NCBI RefSeq assembly: GCF_000150275.1 | Contig: NW_002060958.1 | Coordinates: 100,966 to 164,965, forward strand | Source of the DNA: Trichoplax adhaerens | Lineage: Eukaryota; Animalia; Placozoa | DNA length: 64,000 nt | Direction: 5' to 3' | Notes under the pieces: model-generated | Told to the model about the DNA's origin: nothing | Seen by the model: the letters and a program-made list of their open reading frames with translations, nothing else | Database searches by the model: none | In this document: positions 1 to 64,000 of the stretch, in pieces | Numbering within the stretch: position 1 is the first letter of the stretch | Layout: the number at the start of each line of letters is the position of its first letter | Program-made: the position numbers and the translations under genes

Positions 1-66
1 ACTAAGTAAAACTGCTCAAATTGCAATACGTCTTTTAATATATTAAAAGTCTGATTGAATTTTCAG

Positions 67-31000: not shown

Positions 31001-34000
31001 ATCCGGAAATTCGACCGAATTTTGAATCTGTTTCAGTGCCAAAGATGTTTTTTGGTATAATCATAAAGTAAATTTATCTGTTATATTATACTCTATTATA
31101 ATATTATCGTATTAGTAATTATTTATTAGCAATGATATCAAAATAGCTTAAAGGTTTTAGAATACCTAGCTGATTACTTTAAATTATTTTGTCTTCTTCG
31201 GACCCAACAATTGTATCTCAATCCAACTTTTGTTTCAGCTGGTGCACTGACCCACTCTTTGGACTTTCGCCATTCAGGTGGATGTTGCATTCAGGGTTTT
31301 CGATATACAGGTAAATTCCGTTCAATATAACAATTAGTAACTGCAGTAATTAGAAGTACTCTGAAACCGATATCATATTGTCACGGTACGGACTACCGTG
31401 AGAATAAATGATTAAATTTAGTGTTAAACATTTATATATGGAGATAACTATTAATGACTGTTACAAAACAGCTTTGCTACAAGATAACATAATATACGAT
31501 CAATAAGTCAATTCCTTGAACCACGTATCAAGGAACGATATCTGCACTATCACAAACACTTTTGCTCTACTAGCAGACTACACAAAGACTTAAACGCCTC
31601 GTATTTTACGTTAAACACTAAGTTGGAGAATTATCTTTATTTTACGATATACTGCATTTATATACTATTCCTCAATAGTTCATGAGTCATAGTTAATACA
31701 ATTAACCTCGGAATCATTTACTGAATTAGATATTAATTTTAGCTACTGCTCCCTTAATGCAGACAACAGTATTTACCAACATAGACATGTAATGACTAAT
31801 ACAGAATAGTCAGATTACGATATGTCTTATCACGGAACATTTCCATGATAATTTACAGTCTACCATAAGTAAATTACAATCACAATGATTGGAACTGTAA
31901 GCAGATGATTTGCATTCCCTATTATAACTATTAATTTCAGTATGTGTATAAGTGTCACTGTCATAAAAAGTCAGTGCTATATTAAAACACAGTATATCCA
32001 AATTATAAGTTAACTAAATAAGGACTGGCTAACAGAATTATCCTAACATAGTTATTTCTACTGTAATACAGTATATAACACTGTAACAATGACCTACAGT
32101 AAGAACTACTGTAGTTATTATTTTATTACAGTAAATTATGCTGTATTGTAGTAAGAGTTCTCATAAGGTAACTAATATTAATTGATGATATGAGCTAAAT
32201 TTGGTGAACTGTTATGACTCATACATGATAGCTGCTGCCGAAGGGTATTTAAGCTCGGCAGATAGTGGAATAAATGAAGAGTTTTATAGTTGTTTTAACG
32301 TAGAAGCAAAGGCGTCTAAACTCTTGCAAGGTAGTTAAGGGATACTGAATCCCAGAGACTATAGTAATTTAGAGATTTGTTTTACGTTATCTTTGTAACG
32401 AAACTGGTTTGTGACACATATTTACATTTTAATCTTTCGTTTAGTGCGTGCCTTGCATCGTCTTCTGGAATGGAGATATCATAAACAGCCATGGCCTTCC
32501 ATACCAGTTACCTCAGCAAATTTAATAGATCATCTGTTAACTCGCATTAATCAGGCATCGGTTAGACTATAAAGGCTATACTTGTTATTTATTATTTTAC
32601 ATTGCGATATTAATGGACATATCCATTTTAAGTAAACTAATACTACATAATTGTTTTTAGATTAATCGAGGTTAAAGTTAGTAGAATAATGAAAGATTTT
32701 TTTCATTTTATGTCCGAAATTTTTATTCAGGGATTATATCAAATGTTTGGAAAGCTCGTCGATATTATTATAATCGGTAAACATCTGCCTTAGTGTATAA
32801 TAATTGTAAACTGTTTTTGTAATTAAAGTTCTATAAATAAACTATGGCAGCAGGCTAATAGGATGTGTATAATATCTAACAAAATTATAAAATTTTATAT
32901 GATGACCTAAAAATTTAATTTCATCAATTTTAATCGTTACCACACTTAGGGCATAATCACTCGCATCAGTATCTAGAGGAGGTTCCTGTAGGAATTATAC
33001 CGGAACTAAAAAGTTAGCAAAAGTATCATTTGCACAGATATCGTTTTTTCACTAAATTCCAATTTCTATATTTAATAAAAAAATTTTACCATCAATACAG
33101 GCCCTAATTTTATTTAAATTTAAATTTTTAGCCGAAACTGGTAGAGATATAAAGAATGGTTTCATTACTCTTACTTTTGAATACGGTAAAGAATTTTCCG
33201 GGAAAGGGTAAAATGAATATCAGTATTTTTCAAGCATTAATTTAATATCTGAAAATGCTATACCGTGATATACTCGAAATTCTCTAATATTTTAAGTTAC
33301 AGTATTATATTAGTTATACTATAGTTTGGAATTTTCTAGATTTACATTAGTTAACATCATATAGATGATAAGACTAATTAGGATCTTAACATTTTCCACC
33401 GATATCTAAACTGATCAAATATTCCGATTCCCGACTTAAACACACATCTACTTGGATAGTTTTATTTCCTTGTTTACCAAAGAGATTCTTACCATAAATT
33501 TCAGTTTTCGCGATATTTCAAACTGTAGTAAATTTTCAAATACCTTACTTTAAATATATCCTACTATAACAAACATGATCACGCAAATATTAAATATAAC
33601 TGCAGGGTAATAACATTTTCGATCAGCATTTTTACTGGCTAAATGCTATGAAACAGAACCAAGATCATAACGATATAAAAATTTTATTGGGTATTCTAGT
33701 CGATAGTAAAATATTTTGCAATGAATTGGAGTAGTCAACAAATACTTCAATTGATTATCCAGGAATACAATCTAAACTTAAACCAATAATTTACATTGCT
33801 CGAGAATTTTAAATTTAAATTTTCTAATTATACCTTGCTTTGAACTTTAGCAAGGATACTTTGGGTCCTGAAAATTATAATCATACCGCGAAAACAGCCC
33901 ATCGAAGTGGGAATATTCATCCAATAATTCGATATTATAAAAATTTTATAAAATGTAAATAATTACAGTCTTTCTTAATCATCTTAGTAATCGATGAAAC

Positions 34001-34711
34001 TATGAAATATAGCGAATAAAATCATGTCATTACATTTTGTGTTTGATTACATGGATTAAAGATTTGACCTATATACAATAGCTTATAGAATAGAAATACA
34101 GTATGTAATTATCGCATTTTCATATATAATTTTAGTAAAAATTCTAATAGCTATCTTTACTCAACTATAGCTAAGAAAGATGAAGCATCAATACCACCAG
34201 CAAACAAGGAACACCATGTTTTGGAGGATTTTCTGACAGACTGGTTTGACAATGATATATTCTAAGCACGATTACAAAATGAATTTATAGCATTTTCAAT
34301 TTAGAGTAAAAACTACATATCAACCAACTAAATAATCAATTCTGTCGGATAGGAGCGTTTACAATCATCATGGTCATTACATTAATCTATTTATCCAAAG
34401 TATTCTTCAAACCGATCTTCGCCATTTTTATGTCAAATCTTGCTTTGAGGTAAATTGAATCTTAACCGACCTAAATCTAATTGCGATTGGAAAATAGTAC
34501 TACTGTGTCAAATTCCATTTATTTCGATTGAGCTCTAACTTAATTAAGTATAGCCTTCTAGTATTAAGTTCGTAATCTTTGTATGAATCAATTTTTTTGA
34601 TAAATGTATTGACCATAAGTTTCATAATCTAATTAGCTATCCATGACTTTCAAAACTTTACCGACAAGTTGTGATCGCACCGTTATAGAAAGATCAAAGC
34701 TAAAGACTTAA
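25039..34711 (+). CDS. FOXRED2: FOXRED2/ERFAD-like oxidoreductase, copy 4 (complete; GGCCIQG type)
   Basis: ATG 25039; exon 1 reads [40 protein letters not shown]. The 22 exons splice in frame. Motifs: [58 protein letters not shown]. Exon 14 (31239-31310) reads [24 protein letters not shown]. Last exon 34637-34711 ends [12 protein letters not shown]. Confidence 0.94.
31379..32416 (+). mobile_element. Solo-LTR-like element (about 400 bp net), interrupted by a nested second element; in intron 14 of copy 4
   Basis: Termini TGTCAC...GTGACA with a perfect 5-bp TSD CATAT (31374-31378 / 32417-32421). TATA-like TATTTAA at 32246-32252 is followed by AATAAA at 32269-32274 near the 3' end. Its right end, reverse-complemented (tgtcacaaaccagtttcgttacaaagataacg), resembles the end of the nested element. 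Confidence 0.75.
31459..32088 (-). mobile_element. 630-bp solo-LTR-like element, copy A (nested insertion)
   Basis: Termini TGTTACA...TGTAACA with a perfect 5-bp TSD ATGAC (31454-31458 / 32089-32093). On the minus strand, TATATAAA (31664-31657) precedes AATAAA (31641-31636). Near-identical to 43797-44426. Confidence 0.85.
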
Positions 34712-36706
34712 CTTCTTCACAAGCCATCGATTGTTAACACTCTGTTAGCGATGCCGAAATCTTATGACTATATCTTGTTCTTTCAATAATTAATTAATTA
34801 ATTAACGAAATACTTTTATAATTAATATATAAAGTTATTTTTATTAATTATTTTGCTAAATGGTTGTGTATCAGAAATTATTCATTGTCTTTCGTAGCGG
34901 ACGAAATGTTCGAAATAACAGCGCTGAAATACCCATTGATGATATCTACTTAATATGTAACCATACATATCTGTATAAGCCTAAACTAGGTGATAAAATT
35001 AGCATTTAGTTCCATCAATAGATTGGTATCAATTGCTTTTGCATTTTACTAGCTATAGGTACTGGTTTTCGAAAATTAGAGTTGAATCTAATCACCACCT
35101 GAATTTGATACTCTTTCGGGAATTCACTAGTCAATATTGCATATCGAGGGTCAAACACGTATAATAATTTTAATCTTGCTTCATCGGACATTTATAAAGA
35201 TAGTCTCAAACACATAGGAGACGTAAAATAATCCTTATCCCAGCTATTCTAATAGCATATCATGGAAGAATTCTAAAAATTGGCTTTTTATACGGTCGAT
35301 GCAATTTTACCTTATTCTAATATTAAGTAGAAAGTAAAATGATCCATACTCATCATGCATAAAGCTGTCATTTATGTGGTATTTTATCATGTTGTCTAAA
35401 CTTAAATGTAACAATAGTAATATAAACAGTTTAACGGACTCAAAGATAAATCGACAATATGCTTAACTAATCAATCAGTCAACGTGTTAGGCTTATGCCC
35501 TCAAGCCTATCGATAACTTTCCACTTTCTTCTTAACATCTTACGATTTACAGTAATCTTCCTTTATAATAACACTCCTCTCATATCTTGAATTTGACTTC
35601 TAGCGAAGCAAATTACTATATCCATTTATAAGCTATTTCTCAACCTACCTCTGACAGGAGCGGCGAGTAAAACATAGCATCAATACTAATATAGTGCAAG
35701 TACTGTAAACAATTTGTCCTTCTTCTTACAGTAATACTGCACTCTTTAGCAGCTAATTACATGCATAATTACGCATATTATACCCATAAAAAAGAATTAT
35801 TCACCATTTTCACAATATAGCTTCTTGTACTTTATAACGTAAAGCACAATAGGTACTACATTGCTATAAATGGTATCATAGAGTTCTAAGGAAGCACCTG
35901 TTGCATATATATCGTGGTTATAACCATAAGAAATTGATCAGCTTTCCTTCGCTTTTAGCAAGGAAATTTGTATATAAATTGCATTTTACACTTGAAAAAC
36001 AGCTTATACGATCAGTACATTAGAAATCTCTTCAGCTATATTTAGATTAGTTCTCAATAAGGCAAAAGCTAGCGCATATATGCATAGCATCGCCAATGCA
36101 GTCGCATCTTGTAAATAATAACATATCGGAACCTTATAGTAAGTCCTTTATTCTATTTAAGATTATATAGTATATAAAATACTCCGCTGTACGCTGTAGA
36201 CGTTATGTATATAAATAAGATTGACTATATTGTTGTCAGAAACGTCGATATCAACAAAGCATATTGCTTTCTATAAAATTATTGTCAATATACAGTATTA
36301 AGCTATTCATTGTAGATAGAACGGAATTAGAAAGTTACTGTACAGGAAGGATTACGAACGTGAACAATGCATGTCATCAGAAAAGAAGCTTGAATTAATT
36401 TCAATATAGTCCATGTTATAGCTTCATGACTGTAGCTTTCGTGTATGGCTCGTGATTTAAATCATTTCGAATTTTAGGAATATGCAAGAGCAATATTAAA
36501 TACATCGATTAAACCTAGCATACTTTCTATTTTATCTATTAGAAAATCATCTACTATCGAAATAGACACTGCAATATGATAAATGCCTCAATCAATACAA
36601 TTTTAAATTATTTGCATTATGGCCCAAAAATTATTGTTTTTGTTATGCAAACTACGATGAAATAAAGATTACTATAACGCGTTAATGTGAATTATTCAAG
36701 AGACGC

Positions 36707-36970: not shown

Positions 36971-37010
36971 AAGAATCTCTTTTAGAGTGAAGAAGTGGAT
37001 TCAATCCATC

Positions 37011-43000: not shown

Positions 43001-45768
43001 AACGAATAACTTATTGCGCCGTGAAAATATTTGTTGGCTAAATAGTAAACTCGGTGTTGCTAATTTTGTTATTTTCAATTTCTTATCAGCTGGTGCGTTA
43101 GCACATTCCCTAGACTATCGCATTTCCGGTGGCTGTTGCATTCAAGGATTCAGATATACAGGTGTTACAAAATCAAGCAATTATAAAAAATATTTGAGTT
43201 TAGAGTCAAAGCCTGACTGCTGCCAAATCAATTTATTTAGCTAGAGCATTGCACCACCTGTTAGAGTGGCGGTATCACAAAGTTCCTTGGCCTGCTAAAT
43301 TGCTAACGCCATCAACTCTATATGATGAACTAATAACACGTATAAACCAGGCTTCGGTAAGATTGATCCATTATGTAAAGTTATCATAGATTAAATTTCG
43401 AGCGCTATTTCGTTGAGGTTTTCCTAGTAATTGTTAGATATCTGAACACCGTTAAATTTTTTTATTTGATTTTCCAGCCTAAGAGTTCTTATAAGTGCAT
43501 TAGTCTAAACTACTAAGTAAATTAGACTCAATTCTTTACTTAATATCACTATTAGGGCTTATACCAGATGTTTAGCACATTGGCTGATGTTATATTAATA
43601 GGTAAAGATATTAAAATTTAGTCTTGACAAGCGATTATCTGAAATCAAGCACCCTAATCTAATTTAATGTCTTCTTAGACGCAAAAAATCTTCCTCGATA
43701 TCTTACAGAAGTACCTGTGGCAGTTCTACCAGATCTACAGGGTAGGAAAGGATGATGTCCTTTAATCAATAATTAAAATTATATTGTATGGCTTGGTGTC
43801 ACAAAACAGCTTTGCAACAAGATAACGCAATATACGATCAATAAGTCAATTCCTTGAACCACGTATCAAGGAACGATATCTGCACTATCACAAACACTTT
43901 TGCTCTACTAGCAGACTACACAAAGACTTAAACGCCTCGTATTTTACGTTAAACACTAAGTTGGAGAAATTCTCTTTATTTCACGATATACTGCATTTAT
44001 ATACTATTCCTCAATAGTTCATGAGTCATAGTTAATACAATTAACATTAGAATCATTTACTGAATTAGATATTAAGTTTAGCTACTGCTCCCTTAATGCA
44101 GACAACAGTATTTACCAACATAGACATGTAATGACTAATACAGAATAGCCAGATTACTATATGTCCTATCACGGAACATTTCCATGATAATTTACAGTCT
44201 ACCATAAGTAAATTACAATCACAATGATTGGAATTGTAAGTAGATGATTTGCATTCCCTATTATAACTATTAATTTCAGTATGTGTATAAGCGTCACTGT
44301 CATAAAAGACAGTGCTATATTAAAACACAGTATATCCAAATTAGAAGTTAACTAAATAAGGATAGTCTAACAGAATTATCCTAACATAGTTATTTCTACT
44401 GTAATACAGTATTTAACACTGTAACACTCGGATATCGCTAATCGGATGCCTGCTAATAAGTGGTGTCAAAGATATGTCGTAATACTTAACAATGTAAAAG
44501 AACTTTACTACATTAGAATTCAAAAGTAATTTAGTATAAAGACAATATTTACTCAAATTCACTATTAAATCTGATATGAAAAGCTTGAAAGCGAGCTGCA
44601 TAAACTTTTCTTCTGTAGAATTAACCGGTAGAATGATATCCAATGGCTTTATTACATTAACCTTTGAATATGGAAAGAATTTTTCCGAACGCCAGTAAGT
44701 GAACGAATAAAATATTAATTCGATAGGAAGATACTACTAATAGGGAAGCGATTTCACAAAGTTGCCTTAAATAATAAACAAATAGATATCAATTTTTAGC
44801 TTTTGTACTCGTTATGATTTCATATAGCACCGATACGTTAAGCACGGAAAATTATAGACATACAGCTGAGACTGCTCACCATAGCAAAAATATCCATCCA
44901 GTTCTTCGTTACTATCGAAAATCTACGCTAAGTAATAACACGGAATAAAACCGTAATAGAAGATTTCTCTACGGCTTAATTATTTAGTATATTGACTTTA
45001 AATTTGATATGGAAGAGTGCCATGCTCAAGACATTTATATACATTTACCTAATGATGTAATTTTTAGAAAAATTGTTGGAAAAAAATGAAATGCCCGTAC
45101 CTGATAGAATCCATCACGTCCTTGAAGATTTTTTAACTGATTGGTATGAACGTTTAATTTACTATATAATTTAAAAGATATCTAAAATTAATTTTTAGAA
45201 GGGAGATGATATCACTAAGCTTAAATAGAAGGTTTGAAAACTTGTCTGACTATGGACTTTCAACTTAGGTCTGTCTATTCTCATCACGGTCACTATTTAA
45301 AACTATTTCTTGAAAAAATTTTCAAGTTGGATTTAGACAACTATTATGCAGGAAATTGTTTTGCGGTAAGTAATTTAGAATGACTGTTCATCAAACTTTT
45401 GATAGTAAAATACGCTATAGTTTCTACTTAAACAATCATGTAGAAACCTATATAATACCAAGGTACCAAGACTAAGATAAACAAAAAGCAGTTCAATTTT
45501 CGTTCAGTGCGAGGGCATATATAACGAATTAAGATACTTAGAAAGTACAGTCTATTGTAAATATGATAATTTAATATGACATTAAAATCTAAACATTAAT
45601 AGTAGCTTTAAAATAGTATCAGCTAAGTTCAAAGTGATCATTTTTAATCAAAGTTATTGCCTAACCACTTTATTCTTTGGATAGTTTGCCATGTCCTTCA
45701 AGAAAATGCCAATTACTTGTTCAAAGCCAACTATTCAGAAAATTGAATCAATGATTACTAAAAAGTAG
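37011..45768 (+). CDS. FOXRED2: FOXRED2/ERFAD-like oxidoreductase, copy 5 (complete; GGCCIQG type)
   Basis: ATG 37011; exon 1 reads [38 protein letters not shown](G). Motifs: [77 protein letters not shown]. Last exon 45685-45768 ends IESMITKK-TAG. Confidence 0.94.
37683..38060. repeat. Degenerate tandem repeat, unit about 125 bp, 3 copies (intron 2 of copy 5)
   Basis: agggt....at...tt.acgtta.tcttt.atctct...ggattttac.gcatt units start at about 37683, 37809 and 37934. Confidence 0.78.
43797..44426 (-). mobile_element. 630-bp solo-LTR-like element, copy B; in intron 17 of copy 5
   Basis: Termini TGTCACA...TGTAACA; flanks CTTGG (43792-43796) / CTCGG (44427-44431), a 5-bp TSD with one mismatch. 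Aligns end to end with 31459-32088 with only scattered substitutions, but sits in a non-homologous intron. Confidence 0.85.
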
Positions 45769-46862: not shown

Positions 46863-47231
46863 NNNNNNNNNNNNNNNNNNNNNNNNNNNNNNNNNNNNNN
46901 NNNNNNNNNNNNNNNNNNNNNNNNNNNNNNNNNNNNNNNNNNNNNNNNNNNNNNNNNNNNNNNNNNNNNNNNNNNNNNNNNNNNNNNNNNNNNNNNNNNN
47001 NNNNNNNNNNNNNNNNNNNNNNNNNNNNNNNNNNNNNNNNNNNNNNNNNNNNNNNNNNNNNNNNNNNNNNNNNNNNNNNNNNNNNNNNNNNNNNNNNNNN
47101 NNNNNNNNNNNNNNNNNNNNNNNNNNNNNNNNNNNNNNNNNNNNNNNNNNNNNNNNNNNNNNNNNNNNNNNNNNNNNNNNNNNNNNNNNNNNNNNNNNNN
47201 NNNNNNNNNNNNNNNNNNNNNNNNNNNNNNN
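46863..47231. other. Assembly gap (369 N)
   Basis: Run of N between copies 5 and 6. Confidence 0.99.
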
Positions 47232-47765: not shown

Positions 47766-50700
47766 ATGATGAAATTGATTTTATCTATCCTAATTTTAAC
47801 GGTTAACTTACTGACTATTTATGCGAAATTAAATCATTATCAGTACTGCATCATTGGAAGTGGACCTGGAGGTAAATTATATAATTACTCCCTTCGCTGT
47901 AGTGTTGAATTTAAAAAAGTACAATATTCCTTTAACTTAACCTGCTTGTATTATATTATTATTAATGCTCAAGGAAAACTTATTTATATGATGTAAAAAT
48001 TTTTAACTAAAATTCACCTTCTCTATTAAAATAGGGCTACAAATAGCCTACTATCTGCAACAAGCTAAAAGAAATTATATCATATTTGAAAGAAATAATC
48101 AGTCAGGTATTATATCCGACGAAGTTCGTTGAGAAATGTTTGAAACGGTGATTTCAGCAAAGATAGACAAATCATTTCAGTCATCTAAACAGAAAATATT
48201 TTTTGGCCATTAGACCATTTTACTGTTCATAATTTTCAGTTGAAAAAAGAAATTGAATCTATTCGAGCGGACTACTTGCGTTAATCTGTCTAGACATTCT
48301 TTCGTTAATTTTAACTAATAGTAAATTTAAATGTCTCTATTGCTATCTAGCTAATGTTCTATAACGAAGTTAACAGAAATTAAATGCACCTTCAGATTCT
48401 GAAATTAAATAGAACTCAGGAGTTATTTATGGTTTTATATTAGCATTTACGTATATATGATAGTTTCGTGCATGAGGTAATGCTTTCAACTCTAATCCCT
48501 TAGAGGTACATAAAATAGAAATTTACAATGATCAGTAGCACTATCAATAACAGAACTAAAAAATATTAATATCTGCAGGATGCACGATTTTGAGATACAG
48601 CAGATACCGTACATCATGAATTAGTAGTAAGAACGTGGAAATTCAAGTATTATTTCAACAGTAATGACTAAGTTACAGCAGTAATTTTTGTTCGCCTTCA
48701 TTTTTTTGTATGGTTATCTTTATAATCTCAAACCCAGGATGGTTATTAATTTTGATACCATTTGCCTGTCGAGATATTTAGTGACGAGTATTCTTTTTCA
48801 ATATGAACTTATGCTTTGCATATTTATCAAGTAATGGTCTGTTCCATTAATAATTTCTAGGTTCATTTTTTAGCCTATATCCTCGTCATCGCAGATTATT
48901 ATCTATCAATAAAATACAAACAGGTAATTTAAAATATCTTACTACCAAGTGCCTTCATGATTTATTGTTACTTTCTACCCTTTCTTATAATACGGTTAAT
49001 CTACGCTACGATTGTTGAGTGAATAGCGAGCTTAATGTTACTGTTCACCAAATTAATGATGAAATAAAGATTTCCAGTTATATGCTACGTACCGTAGGTA
49101 ATTGGAATTACCTTGACGTTGTTCATAGTAGGCTTATTCAATTTTTCCATTTATTCTAATATAGGTAGCGAAAACTATCATTTTAACTTAAGACATGACT
49201 GGAATTCACTATTAAGTCATGATGATTCACTGCGGATGTCTCGATACTCTAAAGACTATTATCCACATGCTGACGATATGGTGATTGATAGTTGTATTTG
49301 CAATAATTTAGCTTTATTTTGCTAAGATACACTAAGGTTGGTGACACTTTGAACCAAGATAGAGATTAAGGAACAACACCAGTTTATTAATATACTTTAC
49401 TTTATAAATTAAAAAGCCGTTTAAGTGAGTCTTGCAATAGGTATAACATTATACTGTCTGACACAATCCTTCCACTATCATCTACACTAATTTGGATATT
49501 ACTTGCAAGTCCTACACTAAAATCTTAAATCATCTTACAATACATTACTAAATAAAGAAATATTCTACGAAGGAGAATACTAAATATTAACCTTCATTAC
49601 ATATTGATATTTAAATCAGCTATAGCTTTAATAGCTTTGCCTTAATTTGTTGTTTATAAGCGTACATGCTTTTATACTGCCTCTAAATCGATTTCCATCA
49701 TCCCTAGGTCCGTTACTTAAATAATTTCGCAAACCGATTGCAATTAAATATCCAATACAACACTAACATAATTCAAATTTCGCGTGGTTTGCATCGTGGC
49801 GTTGTGTTGTTTCTTTTAAGAGACCAAAATAAAACTTTTCATTTATGCAATGTGACTATAATAAGGTTTAAAATGCAATTACGTGAATTAGAAATATTTA
49901 CAAAGTTTAGTCATGTCCACGATTACAAGTCTATTTTTTTCTAGATTATATGAAATAGACTTGAAGATAAATACATAACCTTCTTGATCTTTTAGCACAG
50001 GTCTTTTCAAACCAAATAATTATGAAGACGTAGTAGGTATTCAATATACAGAGGTTAGTTACAGATAATAAGCGTAAGAATTAAGTACTTTTACAGAGCT
50101 CTATCTGAAGTCTAGAAATGATGTAAAAATCTTGGCTGTATCTTATATCAGGCATTATAATTAGAGTAACAAAACCATGCTTATCTAGACTAATTCAGAC
50201 GTAAATAGCTTAACCATCATTTACGTTTAGTTTGGAAATAGGAATTTTCCTCAGTATCCTATATATTTTTTTTTACAAATGAATACAAAACTGTAGTAGC
50301 ATATAACAATATAAATCTTTACAGATCAAAAATATCCAGTAATCTAATGAGATTAAACATTTAGCTTTTATGCATATATTATCCTTATCTGCTTTAGGGA
50401 TATGAATCAGTATCGGTTAATAGTTCCGATTTTATCGACAAGAATGTTTTAATCCTTGGCCAAGGCATGTCAAGTTTTCGTATACATGTTCATTTACCTT
50501 AGACTATTTGTAGATCAACTCTTTATTATAATAATAATAACAAAAATCGCATGTAAATAAAGCCTTGTCAAGATAACCAGTAGAGAATAAACCAAATGAC
50601 AGCTATTAATATGACTTGTTGTAGGAAATTCTGCCTTCGAGACTGCTCAAGCTATATCACATACTGCTGGCCTACTCCATCTTCATGGAAGGTATATCAA

Positions 50701-53700
50701 GCATTTTTTATTTCAAGATAGCTATCAGCTAGTATAAGCAAAGAATTTCTAACCTACACATATAATCTCAAACTAATTTGCAATTGTACTATTCTTATAG
50801 AAATAGACTTCGAATAGCTACATCGACGCATTATATAGGAGATATTAGGTATCGTTAGTCCGCTTTTTGCGACGGTTTTATATTTACAAATAGCCTAATC
50901 ATATGCTTTTAGTAGATATCTCTATATATTGGTTTCGTATATTGCTATTTATAAAATCAAAATTAATTTTCCTTTAAAATATGAATTATACAGGATTAAG
51001 AGCGGTTAATTCTCGAGTTATCGATTCATACCAACTTAAAACCTTAGATGGACTTGTAGGTAAAAAAATTTCAAATATAAAATGATATCTTAACAATTTA
51101 TTCAATCCTGGCTTGAAATATTATGTAATATTTAGTGTGTTAAATCAGACAGGTTACAAGATATTTTAAATTAACCAATAATTTATATTACCTACAGTCG
51201 ACACATTACGCAAAGATGTAGCATAGCTGCAGAAATCATAACCAATCCATGGTGTATAATTAAGATAGAAAATATTTAATTTTGGCAGTGTTAAATTAAG
51301 AGTAATGTACTCCATTCATTTAACGAATTTAATAGATAACATAAAATATTCAGATCAGTAATTCTATCACGTATCAGTAAAGTTTTGACTAGCTTTCTTA
51401 TGAGCCTTTGTAAATGCCGTTGCAGAGGGCGATATAAGAAAATTTGGATTTATCAAAACTGAAGACGGAAAAATTAGAATAGGTCGATTAATGCGCGAAG
51501 GTCACAAAATTATAAGTAAGCTCCACGAAACAATAGTCTTTTATGATATATGAGTAAGTATAGCTTGCAAATACATCTAGCAGTGACTGATTAAATTTGG
51601 CTTGTAGATTTATCAACTCATTATATAATAATTTAGAATATGATTACAATTGAAAAAGCTGAAATAAATTTACCATATCAAATTTATAGTTGATACAGGA
51701 GGTATACGTACAAAATATCACCATGTCATTCGCTGCTTAGGTTTTCTGGTAAGTTAATAAGTTTCTAGTAAATGATACTAAGAAATAAACTGATGCACTG
51801 ACTAAAAATGTTTAAGTTGACACACAAAATTGTACTTGTAATTTTCTCTTACAGTTTGACAATTCGATATTTAAGAAAGGAGCCAGGCCAAAAATGAGGA
51901 AAAGTAATTTGAGCCGTTATCCTAAAATTAGCTCAAGTTACGAATCCGTAACGGTTCCTCATATGTTTTTCGGTAATAAGATTGTTCTAAGTGAATAGCT
52001 TTGATGAAACTTTACGCCTAAAAGACAAAATTTTATCCCTTAATTCAGGGATTATAATCTCTACATTATATAGACTTTACGTCATTCCTACAGTAAATCA
52101 ATTGAGAAATTTGTGCAGTTAATTACAATGAAACTGCACTCTGTAAATTATCTTGCGCTTTTAGAAAAATATGAAATGAGGTTACAAACGAACTCATTAC
52201 ATAACTTATTTAAATACAATGGGAGAGAACTTGACTGATAGGTGTCTTATCTGTAATATTCCTTGAAAGATGATTGAAATCGCCGTTTTATGCAATGACT
52301 AAATATTGAAGCTACTAAAATTTGATTTTGGTACTATTCAAATGTTGACCTGATTTCAGCTGGGTCTTTAGTTCACTCTCTGGATTATCGACACTCTGGT
52401 GGATGTTGTATTCAAGGTTTTCGATATGCAGGTAAAATGATTAAATAGATTTGCTAGCATATACATCCACTTAAGAACATGTTTATTCAAACTATTAGTT
52501 TTTCCACTTTGCAATATTGTTGTATGACGATTTCTAATTTTGCATGATATATTCGAAGGAATGTCGTAGAGAAACAACTGTATCTGAGACGCTAAGCTCA
52601 TATCTAGCTAAATGATAACCTATGTTGCAATATTTACTGTAACTTTTTAACACAGACAAGTGCTTAAAACAATCTTAAGATTCCATTTAATATACAATTT
52701 TACACAAACAGTGTCAATCTTACAATATTACTTTAGCAATTTCTTTAACTAACGATACATATAAGAGCTATTTCTGATATTGTAATTACTTTATCTACAT
52801 GGTGAAATTTATGTTGCTAGTGAATTCATTTATAACACAGTAATCTACTACTTTATCCCATGGGAAGGCTTACGATGCAAGTAAAAAACATTTGCAGTGT
52901 AATTTTCACTTTTAATAAAAATTAACAAAATAATTTTTTAGCTCGAGCTTTGCATTACCTATTGGAATGGCGATATCACCGAAATCCTTGGCCTTCAATA
53001 TCTATCAAGACTACACATCTACTTAATCATGTGATGACTCGTATTAATCAAGCCTCAGTAAGTACATAACTTTTAATTGCAAAATTATTTCGGCATTACA
53101 AATTTTTATACCAAGAAAAAGTGAATAATTTAAAGCATTCTATATCTACCAATTCATAGTGATAAATTAAATAAAAGTTTATTTTGGGGGCTGCAGAGAT
53201 CTCTGAGTAATGTATTTATATCATGATAATTATAGGGGCTTTACCAAATGTTTGCTATTTTGACTGATGTCATTTTAATAGGTAAAATAAATAACTATGA
53301 CAAATAATAAATCGGTTAGCCTAATTAAAGTACAGTCTATATTTTAACTTGGATACATCCTAGAAATAATTTCGCTATAGTAGCTACAAATATTGTACAT
53401 TAGATACGTTAGTAATATAAAAATTTAATCTTTATTTTAGAGTGAATTCTGATATACGCTTAGGATGGCGTTATTTTACTAATCTCTATTCATAAAATAT
53501 GATAGGAGATGATCATCAGCATCAGTACTTGAAAGAAATTCCAATCTTAGTTTTGCCTGAGCTCTCAAGCAAGTTTATTTCATTTTATTTCCATTCTTAG
53601 CATAATTTTTTCAACGTATTATAGTCAAGGGATTTAGTAACTAATGCGTCGATTTTCTATAATCAAAAAAATAGATTTCTCTACAATCTATATAAGTAAA

Positions 53701-55064
53701 TATTAATTTGATCATGATTTATGTAATTTATTAATTTATTAATCTTAATGTAGGTGTTCGGTTTTTATGAGTATTTCCAACTACTTAGAGAACATTCATT
53801 TATTTTTTTCTGCTAAATATCTTTAACACTTAGCTCCCTTAATTTCAGAATTAACGGGTCATATGATCACGCATGGTTTCATTACCTTAACTTTTGAGTA
53901 TGGAAAAAACTTTTCAGAGCCTGGGTAAGTATATTTGAATCATGATTTCTCTAATATAAAATGTAAAATGTCGGACATTATCGTAGTTTTTAAATCAGAT
54001 ATAAGGTTTATAGAGTAAAATTCACGTTCTAATAGCTTGATACGATAATTAATTAGTATTTTCGGTCCCCTTAGCACGGACACATTGGGTACAGACAATT
54101 TTAGCCACACGGCCAAATCGGCTCATCGAAGCAAAAATATCCACCCGATTCTCCGCTATTACAGCCGACCTTTTCAAAGTAGAGAAATTATACTTCTGAA
54201 TTGTATATTAGAATAGCAGTTATTCATATCATTATGATATCCTAATTTTGATCGCTAAAATGTATTCCATTACTTATTACTCATGAAAACACTTCTATTA
54301 GAAACGGAAAGGAACGGAAGACTTCCTACTCCAGATAAAGTGCATCATGTTGTTGAGGACTTTTTATCAGATTGGTATGGAAAAAGTTTTATCCTAATAA
54401 TATTCTTATATTTATTCTAGCTATGTAACGATTTTACCAATCCAGGCTATCTTGTAAAATACCTTATTCGGATTTAAACAGGACCAGCTACAATCACCAC
54501 ACTTATCAGCTGCAACTCTTTCTTCAAACTCTGCTCAAAGTAGATTTAAACGAGTTTTACGCCGATTCTTGTTTCAAGGTAGATACTTATCTAAAGATGA
54601 AATTGATTTTAACCAAACAAATAATACTGAGCTTACCTATATTTAGCTTTATACTTGAGGCGTTAAATTACTTTCAATAATTTGGTATTTAATTTAATTT
54701 AATCCAAATTCTTGTTTTAAACTTACGTTTGGACAAGAATTATATTTTATAGACTGGCTACTGTAATTGATGTGATACTATATCAAATACTGTAGTTAAT
54801 TATGTTATTATTTTGTACAGCGATAATAGCGCTGTAGTATTACCAGCCAGGCTTTCGTGCCCCAGAACCCACATCTTAATAAATTATACGTTTCCGTATA
54901 TAATACTCTTCGCGATTATCTTGTACATTCTTTTGGTACAACATAGACACGAGTATTCTTTAACCTTTAAACTAAATTACTTAATTCACTACATAAAATT
55001 ATAGACTTCCATGATTTCAAAGTCTATGCCTCTAAGCTGCTCCAAACCTATTCTGCAAAGATAG
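47766..55064 (+). CDS. FOXRED2: FOXRED2/ERFAD-like oxidoreductase, copy 6 (complete; GGCCIQG type; two GC-AG introns)
   Basis: ATG 47766; exon 1 reads [35 protein letters not shown]. Motifs: [63 protein letters not shown]. The reading frame requires GC donors at 50465 and 53569. Last exon 55005-55064 ends [14 protein letters not shown]. Confidence 0.92.
50465..50624 (+). other. GC-AG intron (intron 7 of copy 6)
   Basis: Exon ends CTT GGC CAA G|gcatgt where all paralogs have G|gt. Acceptor gtag|GA AAT TCT restores LGQGNS. The nearby GT at 50469 is in the wrong phase. Confidence 0.75.
53569..53848 (+). other. GC-AG intron (intron 17 of copy 6)
   Basis: CCT GAG CTC TCA A|gcaagt at the position where paralogs use A|gt or G|gt. 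Acceptor ttcag|AA TTA ACG GGT gives PELSKLTG. The downstream GT is phase 2 and incompatible. Confidence 0.75.
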
Positions 55065-57174: not shown

Positions 57175-60100
57175 ATGGCAAACATCTTTAGCTTTACCTT
57201 CTTATTATTGGCTTTGCCCTTCATTATTCAATCGAAGTTTATCAAACATCAATATTGTATCGTTGGTGCTGGACCAGGAGGTAATTTTTTATCGTTTTTA
57301 TGTTTAATGATTTAGATTTTAATAGCATCTATGTTGCAATTTAGTTATTGTAAGACATGAAATACGGCAAATTATTTATCATAATAATAAGGTTAGATTT
57401 ATTAAGCCACCTCAATATTATGAAACGATTAGGATTACAAATGGCCTATTTTTTACAGCGAGCTGGAAGAGATTACATCGTTTTTGAAAGGCATAATATT
57501 GCAGGTAATCCATAATATTGTGTAGAAGAAACAATCTTTCCACCGAACAATCAGGTTGTAACACTTTCGGCACCAAATTATGGGCTCGAGTCAATATTTG
57601 ATAGTATAGCGTTAATTATCCATATTTTATTCTTGTTACTAAGCATATCGAAGGTTATAGACGATTGATTACTTTTAGCATGCTCACTTTAAGAGCTTTG
57701 AACGTCAAGATAATTTTATTCTCAAAGCAATCTTAATCTTATCAACTTTGGATAAGTTACATGTTTCAATTAAACTGTGATCAGTGTTGGATATCAGTAT
57801 TTATAATCCGAAGAATTTTATTGTGAGGATATCTGCTGCTTTCAAACTCCACATTACTTGGTTCCTCTTGAATAGAATCATTAACCGCTATTTTCTAACA
57901 CAGATTTCGTAATTTCTCCTATGGATATACTTTTTCTTTTTACAACTGTTGTACGAGAACGAATGAGCAATTTGTGGTAGTAGGAAATATTTTAATTTAA
58001 TCTTTTTCGATCCTTCTAATAACGATTTAATGTTAACTACAAATGAGATCCGAATGAAATCATTCTTCTATATATCTTCGTATTTTTATTAACAGTGTTT
58101 AATAAATGTCAAGGTCTCTGTAGGACTTCATAATCTTCCATCTTGACCAAATTCAATTTATCAAGAGTTAAATTTACAACTTATCGCTTCATTCAAAATT
58201 ATTTATAGAAATTTGACCTTAACTTTCTACAGTAACTGTTTCGCCTGTGTAGAGATAACTACTTGAATAGGAATAGCTATTTTCTACTTTAAATCTCTTT
58301 TTTGATTGCTGTTTAAGTTAATCTATAGTTTTATTAAACCTTCTAGGCTCATTTTTCACCCACTATCCGCGACATCGTCGTTTACTATCCTTAAATAAGC
58401 AGTACACAGGTGAAAAAGCTTATTATTAATAATTTGGTAATATGGCGCGATAATATAGCTATAATGAAAGCATCAGATTACTTAGATGTTTCTTGGCGAT
58501 TAGTATCAAGTGCTGACAAATTGGAAATTAATTGATTTGGCTTGTAATTGTTGATTAGGTTCCTTAAATTCCGAGTTCAATCTAAGACATGACTGGAATA
58601 CTCTTCTAAGCGATAATGATTCTTTAAAAATGACTCGTTATTCCGACGATCTTTATCCTCATGCTGATCAATTGGTAATTTTTGATCGTTAAACAAGTTT
58701 GGATGCCGACATGTTGAAATTTTAGTATTCTGTAGTCCTTGCAATTTAGAAATGTGATATTGATAATAATGTGATGCTAATCTATTGTAAAATTCACCTT
58801 CATTATACAGATTAGAATTTTTTTAACAAGCTAGCCATCAGATCATTAATATCCTCTACATGTCGATCTTAAGTTAATCGTAGTAATTATTCCTAGTAAT
58901 AGTAAGCTTCCAAATTCATAATCAACAGTAAATTAGGAAATGAGCAGTAATAGTTTACCCAAGTGTTATTATCATATCGTATTTTAATCCTCCATTCAGC
59001 TCATTGATCCACTTAAAATCAGTAACGTAAATCAACCATAATATCGCTGCTTAGCCGGAAAGTAATCCTTGTATCATCTTTAAAATTGTACCATTAATAT
59101 GAAATTTGTAAACATTTGCAAATTAACATTAATGGACTAATAGAACTTATAAAATCTGCCTCCTCATTTACACTACATATACACTTATGCTAAACATTTT
59201 TAGTATTCATCAAGTAAAAACATGAGGAAGAATTTGTTCCATCTATCATGATTACATTAATCATCCTCCATACAGAAATGCAGTAAACGGTTTAAAACGT
59301 TTAGTACGCAATTCTTGTAACAAATTTTAACTTCTAAAATAGTAAATTAATATTATTTCATTACATGGACTTTGATTTTCAAATTTCGTATCCAATGGCT
59401 TGAAGTAATCTAAATTCCTAATTACTTTGATCTGATCTCCAGGTTCGTTATCTAAATGATTACGCCAATCGACTACAACTAAATATCCAATATCAAACAG
59501 ATATTGTTAAATTATCCCGAGGATATCTTAATGGTATCAATATGTTTAAGTTAATTGACCAACATCAAAATATCCATTTGTGTAATGTAACCATCATTAG
59601 GTATGCTTAATTGGCTGGAATATCCAAATTCCAAGTCTTGTTACTACACCTGTAGTTTATACTGCACAAGTAGCACTAACATTATTACTATAATTAAATC
59701 TATGCAATTATCCAGCACCGGACTCTCAAAACCTAAAATACCAGATACAACCGGTATGCAATATGCTGAGGTAAGTGAATAGTAACGAGCAAAGGTGGTA
59801 GCAAAACAATATAACTACGCAATTGTTACCATTCTCCTTTGCAATTAACTTAGGGACCTATCGTAGTTGAACTAACTCTCAACTATACAAATAAGCTACT
59901 AATGAGTGATAGGGTTTAAATACTTCACTTTATTTACGTTAATCTTAGTCGTAAAATGTATTAAAGAAAAACGTAAGAATATTCTTAGCAATAATAGTCA
60001 AGTGATCTTGCAAGTGACTAAAAGGAACAGAGCAGCTAAGTTAGTGCTCGGCATTTTATAGTCTCGGCCTACGCCGACGATGCACTTGCGAATATTCTTG

Positions 60101-63100
60101 ACATAGCGACTAACACTGTACAGTATACATATTCTAGTCTATTGCATTGGAGAATAGAATAGTTTTAGTTCAAAATCCAATTTACAATTACGAAGAAAAC
60201 ATAGATACAAATACAATATCTCAAAATTAGTGCAGTATCTTCACTTCATTGTCGCATTATTACGTGAACGATATTTCCCCTTTCGTCGAACTTTCCTATT
60301 AAAATTACATTCGATATTAGCTGCTTTAACTAATTACAATACCTTGGTTATACCTCAATAATTTTAGCAATTTTAATCCTATACACCACCTTAAAATTTA
60401 GCTATATGTTAACAACATTTAAATAATATGAAATTCTTATAATAGAATAATAATGATGCTCTCGGCATTTACAACGTAACGCAAAATCTTTGTATTAATA
60501 TCCGTCTGTATTAAACTAATTGATACTATGATACGTTGAATTTACGATCAATCTATAGCTAAACTTTTAATTTTCCTGCACATATTTATAGGGCTACGAA
60601 TCCATATCAACCAATACTTCTGAATATGTAAATAAAAATGTTTTAATTCTAGGACAAGGTAACCCTAATTCTATACTATTCATATACTTTTGACCTAACG
60701 AAGTTGAAATCGTATTATTTCACGTTTCTTCACGAAATTTCTATCGTACTTGTAAGGTAATTCTGCGTTCGAAACAGCTCAAGCTATATCCAACGTTGCC
60801 GGTCTTGTCCATCTTTATGGCAGGTTTGCATTTATGTGTTGACTCGAGCTAATTAGGTTTACATATTTCAATTTAAGCGCTAGGAGTGTTAGCACCTATG
60901 AATTTTACCTACCTGCTCAATTCTGTATATTGTAAGTGGGTTATCTCTAATTAATTTCATATGTAGGGGTGGTGTTCGATTAGCTACATCAACACACTAT
61001 ATAGGAGATCTTAGGTCAGTTAGATCAACAAATTGCTATAGTTGAAGAATGAAACTAAGCACCAAAAATTTCTGTCAACTATGAATAATAATTTTTCATA
61101 AGCTATTATAAGGATAGAACTGAATTATCAAAAGTATTTTGTAAAGCAAGGCCTCTTTATACAAAAATAAATTTTTAATATGTGCCGTTTATTTCGATAC
61201 ACTCACATATAGAGCCGTCAATTCCAAGATAGTTGATTCTTACCAACTTAAATCTTTAGATGGTATCGTAGGTAATTCACGAAGGATTTAGATATTAGAA
61301 TTTATATTAATACATTAGATATAGTATTTTCAATTTTTTATAAATATGATAAACTGTATCTTTCTCTGAATATCTATAGAAGGACCCTTAGAAAACTTTG
61401 GAATACTTAAACGTAAGAAAGGATTAATTTCCATTGCTCTTAGGGGTACAAAAGATGAACTTTTTCTCGTAAGTTCATTGCATTTATGGCAAAACTAGTA
61501 ATTCAGAACTTGATCTAAATACCAATAATAGAGTAGTAAAATTTATGATCGGCAATTACTTACTTTTATTCAAGACCATGATTATTGATAACTATAACTT
61601 ATAGTTATGTTTATTTCTACTATCAATTTCTATGCGCAGATGATATGACAGGAACACGAAAAGGATATCATCATGTGATTCGATGCTTAGGCTTTGAAGT
61701 TAGTATTTATATTTATGTAAATGAACACCTTAAAATGATGGGTGTTAATCATACATATATAGGGGTATGTGTATCAGCTAATTTTCATCCACTGTTAGTA
61801 GTAATGTTATCCATTTAAAAATATATCAGTAAAGAATGTCGTAGCAACGCTTAGAAATTAAATTATACTTTAGATAAGTTAATTTTCTTACCATCAAGTT
61901 ATGTACAGCCTCACCCAGAAATAATAGAATCAAATTATTTTTTCAAGAAACAAATAAAATGATGATCAAAATTAAAGCCATAAAGTTTACCATCTTTTTT
62001 AAGCTTGATTTCTCATAGTTGGATTAAATGATTAGCGAAATAGTTTATATTTTCGTTTAGTAATAACGTAATGTTAGTTTCTACTAATCGCTATTCATTA
62101 TCCTTGATAGAGGGAAATTATTGGCCTTGTGGTGAATGCAATAATTCATAAACTTACCCGATTTTATTTAAATCTATTAAAATTTAGTACGATAGATCTA
62201 TATTTGGCCAAGGTTGTAGACCAAGATCTGCGAAGAAAGAGTCTATAGAACACTATCCCGACATTAAAGCCAATTATGAAGCGGTTTCTGTAGCTCATAT
62301 GTACTTTGGTATGGATATATTTTCACCTATATAATTACACAGTAAAGTTTTTTAATCTGATAAACTCTTGTGTCTCGTGTTTTAAATTTGCTATCAAGTC
62401 AACTTCATCCGTAAATATATTTATTAGTTTAATCAATCATAATTAACCAAAATATTAGCAATCATTAACATCCAAATATTTACTTCCCTGAACAATTGCT
62501 ATTTTAGCCGGAGCATTAACTCATTCCTTAGATTATCGACATTCTGGCGGATGTTGCATTCAAGGTTTCCGATATTCAGGTACTAAAAAACTATATTTCA
62601 TCTCTCAGCTAAATGATATAATTGATCTCAAGGCATGACAGTATCCCAGCATGCTAAGTCATTGCAAAAATTGCAGTAGCCCAGAGTTACTCTACATGCC
62701 CATGCTTTATTTAATAAAGGCAGTACATTGATACATATTTAAATTTAAACTTTTACACTTATTTACATAGTTGTTAGTGCATGGCAATCATACTTCTAAT
62801 ATAAAATGACTTATCGTTATTTTAATTTTCAAATTGTTAGTTCGTGCATTACATCGCTTATTAGAATGGCGATATCATCAAGTTCCTTGGCCTGCTAAAT
62901 TATTATCAAGCGAACAATTATTATATTATCTTAGCATGCGAATAAATCAAGCTTCTGTAAGAAAGATTGTGTTTGCTTATTTCTGCCAAAGAATAATAAT
63001 TATCGTTTACTAATTCTAAAACACTTATGAAAGTTCAATATATAAAGTTTATATAAAAACAATAATAACTTTACAAATAATATTTGAAACGTTTAAGTAT

Positions 63101-63975: not shown

Positions 63976-64000
63976 GTAAATCAAAAGTATTTTTCATTTT

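What the first reader, a model, noticed from the sequence alone, without database searches (positions are those of the whole stretch)
31283..62557. Vicinal Cys-Cys gained in the flavin-proximal motif of copies 4-7 (SAGGFIHG to SGGCCIQG)
Seen: exon 14 reads DYRKSSGGFIHGFRY (copy 1), DFRRSSGGFIHGFRY (copy 3) and DYRRSGGGSIQGIRY (copy 2), but D(Y/F)R(H/I)[11 protein letters not shown] in copies 4-7. The CC codons are at 31283-88, 43134-39, 52404-09 and 62552-57, with synonymous variation around them, so the conservation is at protein level. Known: this segment follows the C-terminal FAD-binding strand (ESxxVPNM(Y/F)FAG), and in two-dinucleotide-binding flavoproteins the following loop/helix lies near the isoalloxazine ring. 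Human FOXRED2 has GGFIHG here, as I recall it. Inference: this clade may have gained a redox-active vicinal dithiol or metal-binding pair next to FAD, changing the chemistry of the enzyme.
Basis: partly seen in the sequence, partly recalled or inferred. Interest (0 to 1): 0.8.

Follow-up and report, generated by a model that had tools for sequence, protein, structure and literature searches.

The report
Cys-Cys swap in placozoan ERFAD flavoenzymes
Five neighbouring copies of an ER-type flavoenzyme gene (FOXRED2/ERFAD) in the simple animal Trichoplax have replaced residues that are invariant in all other relatives seen, right after the last FAD-binding strand, with Cys-Cys-Ile-Gln; the change is real, old and found nowhere else, but whether the cysteines do redox chemistry is untested.

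Summary
The window is Trichoplax adhaerens DNA, not human. It holds seven tandem FOXRED2/ERFAD-like genes. An eighth intact copy and a partial ninth lie just downstream of the window.

Exon 14 reads [11 protein letters not shown] in copies 4-7 at the stated codons, and also in copy 8. Copies 1 and 3 keep the family motif SSGGFIHGFRY. Copy 2 is intermediate (SGGGSIQGIRY).

About 165 other family members carry the motif, including the sponge brominase OroF. In all of them F-[I/V/L]-H-G-F-R-Y is invariant and none has Cys at either position. A motif-restricted search of 5.8 billion proteins found CC only in T. adhaerens and Trichoplax sp. H2.

Synonymous sites between the copies are saturated while dN is about 0.25, so these are old genes under purifying selection. 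Four of the 14 fixed differences between the canonical copies and the CC clade fall within this six-residue stretch.

In an AlphaFold model the CC pair sits at the N-terminal cap of helix 378-397. That helix superposes on the final helix of thioredoxin reductase, YpdA and a bacterial FMO, which in that fold (from my own knowledge) abuts the flavin.

No Cys-to-flavin distance could be measured, so redox activity stays a hypothesis. The assembly gap is intergenic and touches no exon.

The parts
31283..31288 (+). Cys-Cys codons (TGT TGC), copy 4
43134..43139 (+). Cys-Cys codons (TGT TGC), copy 5
52404..52409 (+). Cys-Cys codons (TGT TGT), copy 6
62552..62557 (+). Cys-Cys codons (TGT TGC), copy 7
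31239..31310 (+). Exon 14 of copy 4 (72 nt, AG/GT, phase 1): ..[17 protein letters not shown]
43090..43161 (+). Exon 14 of copy 5: ..[17 protein letters not shown]
   Evidence: same motif in public models P0157 and P0158
52360..52431 (+). Exon 14 of copy 6: ..[17 protein letters not shown]
62508..62579 (+). Exon 14 of copy 7: ..[17 protein letters not shown]
   Evidence: same motif in model P0160
2598..2669 (+). Exon 14 of copy 1, canonical motif SSGGFIHGFRY
11192..11263 (+). Exon 14 of copy 2, intermediate motif SGGGSIQGIRY (His already Gln, Phe already Ser, Gly kept)
   Evidence: model P0159
21043..21114 (+). Exon 14 of copy 3, canonical motif SSGGFIHGFRY
25039..34711 (+). Copy 4 gene, about 22 coding exons. 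ATG at 25039 (signal-peptide-like N-terminus plus GSGPGG); last coding exon 34637-34708. Exon borders apart from exon 14 are approximate.
   Evidence: exons 1-12 equal public model XP_002116515.1
37011..45768 (+). Copy 5 gene (ATG 37011; last coding exon 45685-45765)
47766..54584 (+). Copy 6 gene (ATG 47766; mapped at least to 54584; last exon not located)
57175..64000 (+). Copy 7 gene (ATG 57175; runs off the window, last exons in locus L002)
1..4103 (+). Copy 1 gene, exons 4 onward (exons 1-3 lie upstream of the window in locus L004)
6253..13682 (+). Copy 2 gene (approximate span)
   Evidence: model P0159
15040..22828 (+). Copy 3 gene (approximate span)
46863..47231 (.). Assembly gap (369 N), intergenic between copy 5 and copy 6

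Best explanation
Shown: the window is part of a placozoan-specific tandem array of eight intact ERFAD/FOXRED2-like genes. These encode secretory-pathway NADPH/FAD two-dinucleotide-binding flavoproteins with a family-specific C-terminal domain. Copies 1 and 3 keep the family's invariant motif. Copy 2 plus copies 4-8 form a fast-evolving, monophyletic offshoot. In copies 4-8 the segment S-A-G-G-F-I-H-G has become S-G-G-C-C-I-Q-G. In the model this segment is the loop and N-cap of the long helix that follows the last FAD-binding strand. Inferred mechanism: in the TrxR/GR-type fold the N-terminus of that helix points at the pyrimidine edge (N1/C2=O) of the isoalloxazine. The clade has therefore swapped the Gly-Phe and His that line this part of the flavin pocket in every other family member for two thiols and an amide. 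I think this most likely retunes flavin reactivity and the shape of the adjoining pocket in a neofunctionalised enzyme subfamily, in the way the sponge paralogue OroF became a brominase. Because these proteins fold in the oxidising ER, the two cysteines are most likely pocket-lining thiols or a local vicinal disulfide, not an obligatory electron relay. The canonical copies 1 and 3 presumably keep the ancestral ERFAD role.
For: Organism and family: exon 4 of copy 4 is 100% identical to T. adhaerens XP_002116515.1. The public full-length models P0155-P0160 are 40-45% identical over more than 90% of their length to FOXRED2 of cnidarians, echinoderms and vertebrates. Pyr_redox_3 scores 104-113 bits against a cut-off of 30. 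Uniqueness: (A/S)GGF[IVL]HGFRY is invariant in about 165 relatives and in OroF. A motif-restricted search of 5.8 billion proteins returns CC only for T. adhaerens and sp. H2, with a drop from 95-110 bits to 74 bits for the next hit. A degenerate DNA pattern found nothing in the metagenome collection. Selection: pS is 0.71-0.85 (saturated) and dN 0.24-0.27 among copies 4-8. All eight exon-14 copies have intact splice sites and phase. Focused remodelling: at 24 positions that are at least 90% conserved elsewhere, none of the CC-clade models has the canonical residue; F377, H379, E421, F506, L507 and Y512 are 100% conserved elsewhere. Four of 14 fixed differences from copies 1 and 3 lie within 6 residues. 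Tree: copy 2 plus the CC copies form a clade (SH-aLRT 99) on a stem of 0.73 changes per site; the CC copies form a clade at 98 (quick tree). Structure: mean pLDDT 84, strand 358-360, loop 369-377, helix 378-397. Model residues 22-397 cover the whole chains of SMFMO 4a9w/4c5o (Z 25, rmsd 2.7 Å over 309 residues) and YpdA 7a7b (Z 24.7), and residues 20-398 cover E. coli TrxR 1tde residues 1-315 (Z 18.6). hhalign puts the FFAG strand on the TrxR GD strand. Precedent for neofunctionalisation in this family: OroF (PMC12833800).
Against: No model with FAD could be inspected, so flavin proximity rests on fold equivalence plus textbook knowledge of the GR/TrxR fold. The loop holding the CC has only moderate confidence (pLDDT about 75). 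A global sequence alignment instead puts CC on TrxR G302/C303, about two turns into the helix, which would place them roughly 10 Å or more from the ring (my estimate). Retention of two residues in five paralogues is not significant by itself, since 49% of columns are invariant. There are no expression, cofactor or activity data for any copy, and the reaction of canonical ERFAD is itself unknown. T. adhaerens and sp. H2 are 99% identical, so they add little independent evolutionary depth.
Confidence: 0.5

Rival explanations
1. The vicinal Cys-Cys is a redox-active dithiol/disulfide (an eight-membered ring) that exchanges electrons with the flavin. That would turn an ERFAD-type protein into an NADPH-dependent disulfide reductase or a thiol oxidase with a built-in redox centre.
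For: The pair sits in a Gly-rich loop at the cap of the flavin-abutting helix, a flexible context that suits a vicinal disulfide turn. Both cysteines are kept in all five copies, with TGT/TGC variation. The NADPH motif [10 protein letters not shown] and the FAD motif GxGPGG are retained. [quoted passage not shown] The closest solved fold, YpdA, is a disulfide reductase.
Against: In TrxR the Cys-Cys is on a mobile C-terminal tail and is fed by a CxxxxC disulfide next to the flavin, not by the flavin directly. No such second centre exists here. The only clade-specific cysteines are these two, and the TrxR CATC site aligns with STNTSE. A helix cap at the N1/C2=O edge is not where flavin-thiol chemistry happens: the GR Cys is 3.4 Å from the ring, and YpdA's Cys at about 8 Å was judged too far. 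No distance could be measured.
Confidence: 0.2
2. The substitutions are structurally tolerated drift in redundant paralogues. The cysteines are ordinary buried small residues and the chemistry of the enzyme is unchanged.
For: Eight paralogues give redundancy. 49% of columns are invariant among the CC copies, so conservation of two sites is expected for any constrained position. Copy 2 shows that Gly-Ser also works at these positions.
Against: The replaced Phe and His are invariant in about 165 relatives from sponges to vertebrates, and in a functionally diverged brominase. The fixed changes are concentrated in this motif. They are accompanied by changes at other positions that are 100% conserved elsewhere, on a long stem branch.
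Confidence: 0.15
3. One cysteine tethers the flavin covalently (S-cysteinyl-FAD), or the pair binds a metal ion.
For: From memory only: the local string S-G-G-C resembles the monoamine oxidase flavinylation peptide S-G-G-C-Y. The pair is probably close to the cofactor.
Against: The MAO peptide lies in a different structural element, upstream of its last FAD-binding strand (my own knowledge). A helix cap at the pyrimidine edge is far from the 8-alpha methyl and C6 positions used for Cys linkage. Two thiols alone make a poor metal site, and no further clade-specific Cys or His was gained; a His was lost.
Confidence: 0.07
4. The motif is an annotation or assembly artefact, or the CC copies are pseudogenes.
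For: Two public models of copy 4 are wrong: one is truncated and one reads exon 14 out of frame. There is an assembly gap inside the array.
Against: Raw sequence shows the codons in an exon with conserved splice sites and phase in all eight copies. About 19-22 homologous exon blocks per copy contain no stops, although not every short exon of copy 6 was located. dN/dS is well below 1. Independent Trichoplax sp. H2 models carry the motif in frame. The gap is intergenic.
Confidence: 0.03

Closest known systems
ERFAD / FOXRED2 (ER flavoprotein associated with degradation) of animals
   Same: Same length class and architecture: signal-peptide-like N-terminus, GxGPxG FAD motif, [10 protein letters not shown] NADPH motif, Pyr_redox_3 domain ending at the FFAG strand, and the family-specific C-terminal domain. 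Identity is 40-45% over more than 90% of the length. Copies 1 and 3 keep the invariant SSGGFIHGFRY.
   Different: Copies 4-8 replace A-G-G-F-I-H with G-G-C-C-I-Q, and at 23 further positions that are at least 90% conserved elsewhere none of the CC-clade models has the canonical residue. No KEEL/KDEL-like end was seen on copies 4, 5 and 8. There are eight tandem copies; no other genome was surveyed for copy number.
OroF, the sponge ERFAD-like FAD-dependent pyrrole brominase (PMC12833800)
   Same: A lineage-specific duplicate of ERFAD in an early-branching animal that took on new chemistry. It has a signal peptide and no KEEL.
   Different: OroF keeps the canonical motif (KSAGAFIHGFRY). Its new activity therefore did not need this site to change, and the Trichoplax clade is a different kind of departure. 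No biosynthetic neighbours were examined here.
Closest solved folds: bacterial FMO SMFMO (4a9w/4c5o), bacillithiol disulfide reductase YpdA/Bdr (7a7b, 7a76), low-Mr thioredoxin reductase (1tde)
   Same: Model residues 22-397 superpose on the whole chains (Z 25.0, 24.7 and 18.6). This includes the final helix, which here starts right after the CC pair. The GD-type strand aligns by sequence.
   Different: Identity is only 14-20%. The extra C-terminal domain of about 190 residues is absent from those enzymes. There is no CATC redox disulfide. YpdA works without an active-site Cys.
Vicinal Cys-Cys / Cys-Sec redox centre of high-Mr thioredoxin reductases
   Same: Adjacent cysteines in an NADPH/FAD flavoprotein of the same superfamily, forming an eight-membered-ring disulfide that is catalytically essential (PMC11508645).
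   Different: There it sits on a flexible C-terminal tail of the partner subunit and is reduced by a flavin-adjacent CxxxxC, not by FAD. Here the pair is internal, at a helix cap, with no second redox disulfide.

Membership tests
FOXRED2 / ERFAD-like flavoproteins | Full-length similarity to animal FOXRED2, including the C-terminal domain | tested here: met
   E-values of 1e-125 to 1e-141 and 37-42% identity over 91-100% of the query (one 60% outlier) for the copy 4 orthologue model. 40-46% identity of P0155 to 113 relatives.
FOXRED2 / ERFAD-like flavoproteins | N-terminal FAD dinucleotide motif GxGPxG and second (NADPH) motif [10 protein letters not shown] | tested here: met
   GSGPGG or GAGPGG, and [10 protein letters not shown], are present in the CC-clade models. 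The Arg of GRGNS is Gln.
FOXRED2 / ERFAD-like flavoproteins | Pfam Pyr_redox_3 above the gathering score | tested here: met
   103.6, 113.4 and 108.3 bits against a cut-off of 30; the profile is matched end to end (2-305/305) and ends at the FFAG strand.
FOXRED2 / ERFAD-like flavoproteins | Invariant helix-cap motif (A/S)GGF[I/V/L]HGFRY | tested here: not met
   Copies 4-8 have [10 protein letters not shown] and copy 2 has GGGSIQGIRY. Copies 1 and 3 meet it. Copies 4-8 are thus divergent paralogues, not orthodox ERFAD.
FOXRED2 / ERFAD-like flavoproteins | Signal peptide and C-terminal KEEL/KDEL-type ER retrieval signal (as in human ERFAD) | tested here: inconclusive
   Hydrophobic N-termini are seen by eye in all copies located, but no signal-peptide predictor was available. 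The C-terminal ends ..KLKT..ITKK and ..TMKL are not KDEL-like. The cnidarian, sponge and echinoderm homologues also show no obvious KDEL-type end.
Low-Mr thioredoxin reductase | Redox-active CxxC (CATC) in the NADPH domain | tested here: not met
   hhalign puts TrxR CATCDG opposite STNTSE.
High-Mr TrxR-type vicinal Cys-Cys redox centre | C-terminal tail x-Cys-Cys-x, plus a CxxxxC disulfide beside the flavin | tested here: not met
   The CC is internal (residues 376-377 of 584). The only other conserved cysteines are C28, C166, C317, C574 and C584, all shared with the whole family.
Flavoprotein with Cys next to the isoalloxazine | Cys SG within a few Å of flavin C4a/N5 | not testable with these tools
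   The model has no cofactor and no coordinates are returned. Only fold equivalence of helix 378-397 to the terminal helix of TrxR/YpdA/SMFMO is available, and the sequence register disagrees with it.

The most novel reading that the evidence does not exclude
The internal vicinal Cys-Cys forms a strained eight-membered disulfide in direct redox contact with FAD. That would be a one-centre NADPH-to-FAD-to-Cys-Cys reductase or thiol oxidase, an architecture not known in any flavoprotein disulfide oxidoreductase. It would have been invented in placozoans by converting the invariant Gly-Phe/His pocket of the enigmatic ERFAD family.
Probability: 0.15. Interest if true: 0.8.

Novelty: new variant of a known kind. 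Interest (0 to 1): 0.5.

Why it matters
ERFAD/FOXRED2 is a conserved animal flavoprotein whose own reaction has never been identified. The first chemistry assigned to the family, bromination by the sponge paralogue OroF, was published only in 2026.

Trichoplax offers a natural experiment inside one 80-kb array: canonical copies, an intermediate copy, and five copies in which the most conserved motif of the family has been rewritten to Cys-Cys-Ile-Gln. Comparing these proteins side by side could show what the invariant Phe and His do in ERFAD. It could also show whether placozoans evolved a new thiol-based flavoenzyme.

It also flags that two public gene models of copy 4 hide the motif.

Tried and rejected
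**Searches that gave nothing useful**
- Per-exon Pfam scans. The exons are too short, so the public full-length models were scanned instead.
- The look-up of encoding contigs for P0001: not on record.
- The original ERFAD paper (PMC2736413): not held.
- Papers naming Trichoplax together with FOXRED2, or the TRIADDRAFT gene ids: none.
- Metagenome scan with the back-translated [10 protein letters not shown] pattern: 0 hits. This is no evidence about other placozoans, which that collection may not hold.

**Sequences set aside**
- P0151, the sp. H2 model of copy 4, reads exon 14 out of frame. It was not used for folding.
- Fourteen of the longer partial representatives (147-585 aa) were tested as possible models of copies 1, 3 or 6. 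None maps to the locus. Those copies have no public full-length model here, so they were left out of the alignment, tree and fold.

**Steps limited or left out**
Copy-to-copy statistics were summed codon by codon from exon-wise tblastn maps.
- The careful tree search did not finish in the time allowed, so the quick IQ-TREE result is reported.
- HMMER against PDB sequences aligned only the N-terminal motifs, not the CC region.
- The Cys-to-flavin distance could not be obtained. Structure prediction returns no coordinates or cofactor.
- Complex prediction was not used, because no protein-protein binding is claimed.

**Considered and rejected**
- The contig is not human: exon 4 of copy 4 is 100% identical to a Trichoplax adhaerens protein.
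- Recent gene conversion does not keep the motif alike: synonymous sites in exon 14 differ throughout.

Full report
**What is in the sequence**

Each lies in a 72-nt exon with AG/GT borders and the same codon phase. The homologous exon exists in all seven copies in the window.

- Copies 1 and 3 read SSGGFIHGFRY.
- Copy 2 reads SGGGSIQGIRY.
- Copies 4-7 read [11 protein letters not shown].

Neighbouring codons differ synonymously from copy to copy. So the identity is at protein level and does not come from recent gene conversion.

**Organism and gene models**

The window has 30% G+C and one N run. Exon 4 of copy 4, searched by reference, is 100% identical to Trichoplax adhaerens XP_002116515.1. 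The contig is therefore placozoan, not human.

I searched exons by reference and then worked with public full-length models returned by the searches:

- P0155 is copy 8.
- P0157 and P0158 are copy 5.
- P0160 is copy 7.
- P0159 is copy 2.
- P0156 is the sp. H2 orthologue of copy 8.

Copy 4 has about 22 coding exons. The ATG is at 25039, the N-terminus looks like a signal peptide, and GSGPGG follows.

**The assembly gap**

The gap at 46863-47231 lies between the last coding exon of copy 5 (which ends at 45765) and the ATG of copy 6 (47766). It is intergenic and no frame crosses it.

**The array is larger than the window**

The window is G000:C1399:100966-164965. Copy 1 starts about 0.9 kb upstream of it. 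An eighth intact copy (TRIADDRAFT_31100) lies 2.6-9.6 kb downstream and also has GGCC. A fragment with only exons 3-4 follows it. So five copies carry CC, not four.

**How unusual the change is**

In a 119-sequence alignment, positions A374, G376, F377, I378 and H379 are at least 90% conserved, and G375, G380, R382 and Y383 are invariant. Across about 165 motif-bearing relatives in three searches, F-[I/V/L]-H-G-F-R-Y never varies outside Trichoplax, and no relative has Cys at either position. The sponge brominase OroF, the only family member with a known reaction, also keeps AGAFIHGFRY.

A search of 5.8 billion proteins scored on residues 350-400 alone returned the five Trichoplax CC proteins at 95-110 bits. 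The next hit was a canonical sequence at 74 bits. A degenerate DNA pattern found nothing in the metagenome collection.

**Age and selection**

I computed codon-by-codon comparisons on exon-wise tblastn maps. Among copies 4-8, pS is 0.71-0.85 (saturated) and dN is 0.24-0.27. Amino-acid identity on well-aligned columns is 64-68%. These are old duplicates under purifying selection.

49% of columns are invariant among the five CC copies, so keeping two residues is not remarkable by itself. The location is what stands out. Of 14 positions where copies 1 and 3 agree and all CC copies share a different residue, four fall within the six residues S/G, G, G/C, F/C, I, H/Q.

Against the wider family there are 24 positions that are at least 90% conserved elsewhere and where none of the CC-clade models has the canonical residue. 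Six of them are 100% conserved elsewhere: F377, H379, E421, F506, L507 and Y512. Copy 2 shares most of these changes but has Gly-Ser where the others have Cys-Cys.

A quick maximum-likelihood tree groups copy 2 with the CC copies (SH-aLRT 99) on a stem of 0.73 changes per site. The CC copies themselves form a clade (SH-aLRT 98). Copies 1, 3 and 6 were left out of the tree for lack of public models, and copy 4 because its models are faulty.

The likely order of events is canonical, then His to Gln and Phe to Ser, then Gly to Cys and Ser to Cys. Each step is a single base change.

**Where the pair sits**

Pfam Pyr_redox_3 ends exactly at the Gly of FFAG. hhalign aligns VPNMFFAG with the IPGVFAAGD strand of E. 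coli thioredoxin reductase.

An AlphaFold2 model of P0155 has mean pLDDT 84 and pTM 0.87. It shows strand 358-360, a short helix 362-368, loop 369-377 and a long helix 378-397. The CC pair is therefore the N-cap of that helix, where local pLDDT is about 75.

VIA-align superposes model residues 22-397 on the entire chains of SMFMO (Z 25, rmsd 2.7 Å over 309 residues) and YpdA (Z 24.7). It superposes residues 20-398 on E. coli TrxR residues 1-315 (Z 18.6). Helix 378-397 is therefore the counterpart of the last helix of that fold.

From established knowledge of the GR/TrxR fold (my own knowledge, not a tool result), the N-terminus of this helix points at the flavin N1/C2=O edge. That supports 'flavin-proximal'. 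A global sequence alignment, however, places CC two turns into the TrxR helix. I estimate the distance as roughly 4-12 Å and cannot narrow it. The tools return no coordinates and no cofactor.

**What it probably does**

The FAD and NADPH motifs are intact. The only clade-specific cysteines are these two. There is no TrxR-type CATC site.

My best reading, at 0.5, is that the flavin pocket was rebuilt in a neofunctionalised subfamily. Phe and His were lost, and two thiols and an amide were gained. In this reading the cysteines line the pocket or form a local vicinal disulfide.

Vicinal Cys-Cys is a proven redox centre in high-Mr thioredoxin reductases (PMC11508645). There, however, it sits on a mobile tail and is fed by a second disulfide. 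The pyrimidine edge is also not where flavin-thiol chemistry normally occurs. In YpdA a Cys about 8 Å from the ring was judged non-catalytic.

The remaining rivals are drift (0.15), a covalent flavin link or metal site (0.07) and artefact or pseudogene (0.03).

**Novelty**

No paper in the library links Trichoplax to FOXRED2 or names these genes. The proteins are in public databases but are not described, and two models of copy 4 hide the motif.

I rate this a new variant of a known kind. It is a real and unique rewrite of the signature motif of an enzymatically unsolved family. The chemistry is still hypothetical.

An earlier first-stage note on the same window (s1-739329) called this a tandem array of at least seven diverged FOXRED2 genes, which my results confirm.

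Noticed in passing
L002 2652-9619 (G000:C1399:167617-174584) and L005 1628-1948: An eighth intact copy (TRIADDRAFT_31100, also Cys-Cys) lies just past the window. It is followed by a fragment with only exon 3- and exon 4-like pieces, probably a decayed ninth copy. No further copies were seen in the 30 kb upstream or in the next 20 kb downstream.
   Followed up: partly
window 31459-32088 and 43797-44426: A 630-bp element is 96% identical between the intron after exon 14 of copy 4 and an intron of copy 5. The surrounding genes are saturated at synonymous sites, so this is a recent repeat or transposon insertion, or a local transfer.
   Followed up: partly
window 25039-31310 (copy 4): Public models of copy 4 are faulty. 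XP_002116515.1 (328 aa) runs into the intron after exon 12 and stops. RDD41257.1 of Trichoplax sp. H2 reads exon 14 in the wrong frame, so the Cys-Cys motif is missing from it. The H2 model of copy 8 (P0156) appears to carry retained-intron inserts.
   Followed up: yes
window 37113-37115 (copy 5, exon 1): T. adhaerens copy 5 reads GAGLGG (CTA) where the sp. H2 orthologue and more than 90% of the family have GAGPGG. This is a Pro-to-Leu change inside the FAD dinucleotide-binding motif. It could be a real difference or a base error.
   Followed up: partly
P0155 residues 483-512 (C-terminal domain; e.g. window about 33852-33953 in copy 4): A second cluster of clade-specific replacements hits residues that are 100% conserved elsewhere: SNFLHPV.YYY becomes S(R/K)NIHPV.RYY. 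E421 also becomes Q in RINEASG. These changes may mark a site shared with the CC motif, but the 3D relation could not be checked.
   Followed up: no
window 21490-21922 and 23963-24292: Short tandem duplications (periods of about 241 bp and about 179 bp) lie in non-coding sequence at the 3' part of copy 3 and between copies 3 and 4.
   Followed up: no
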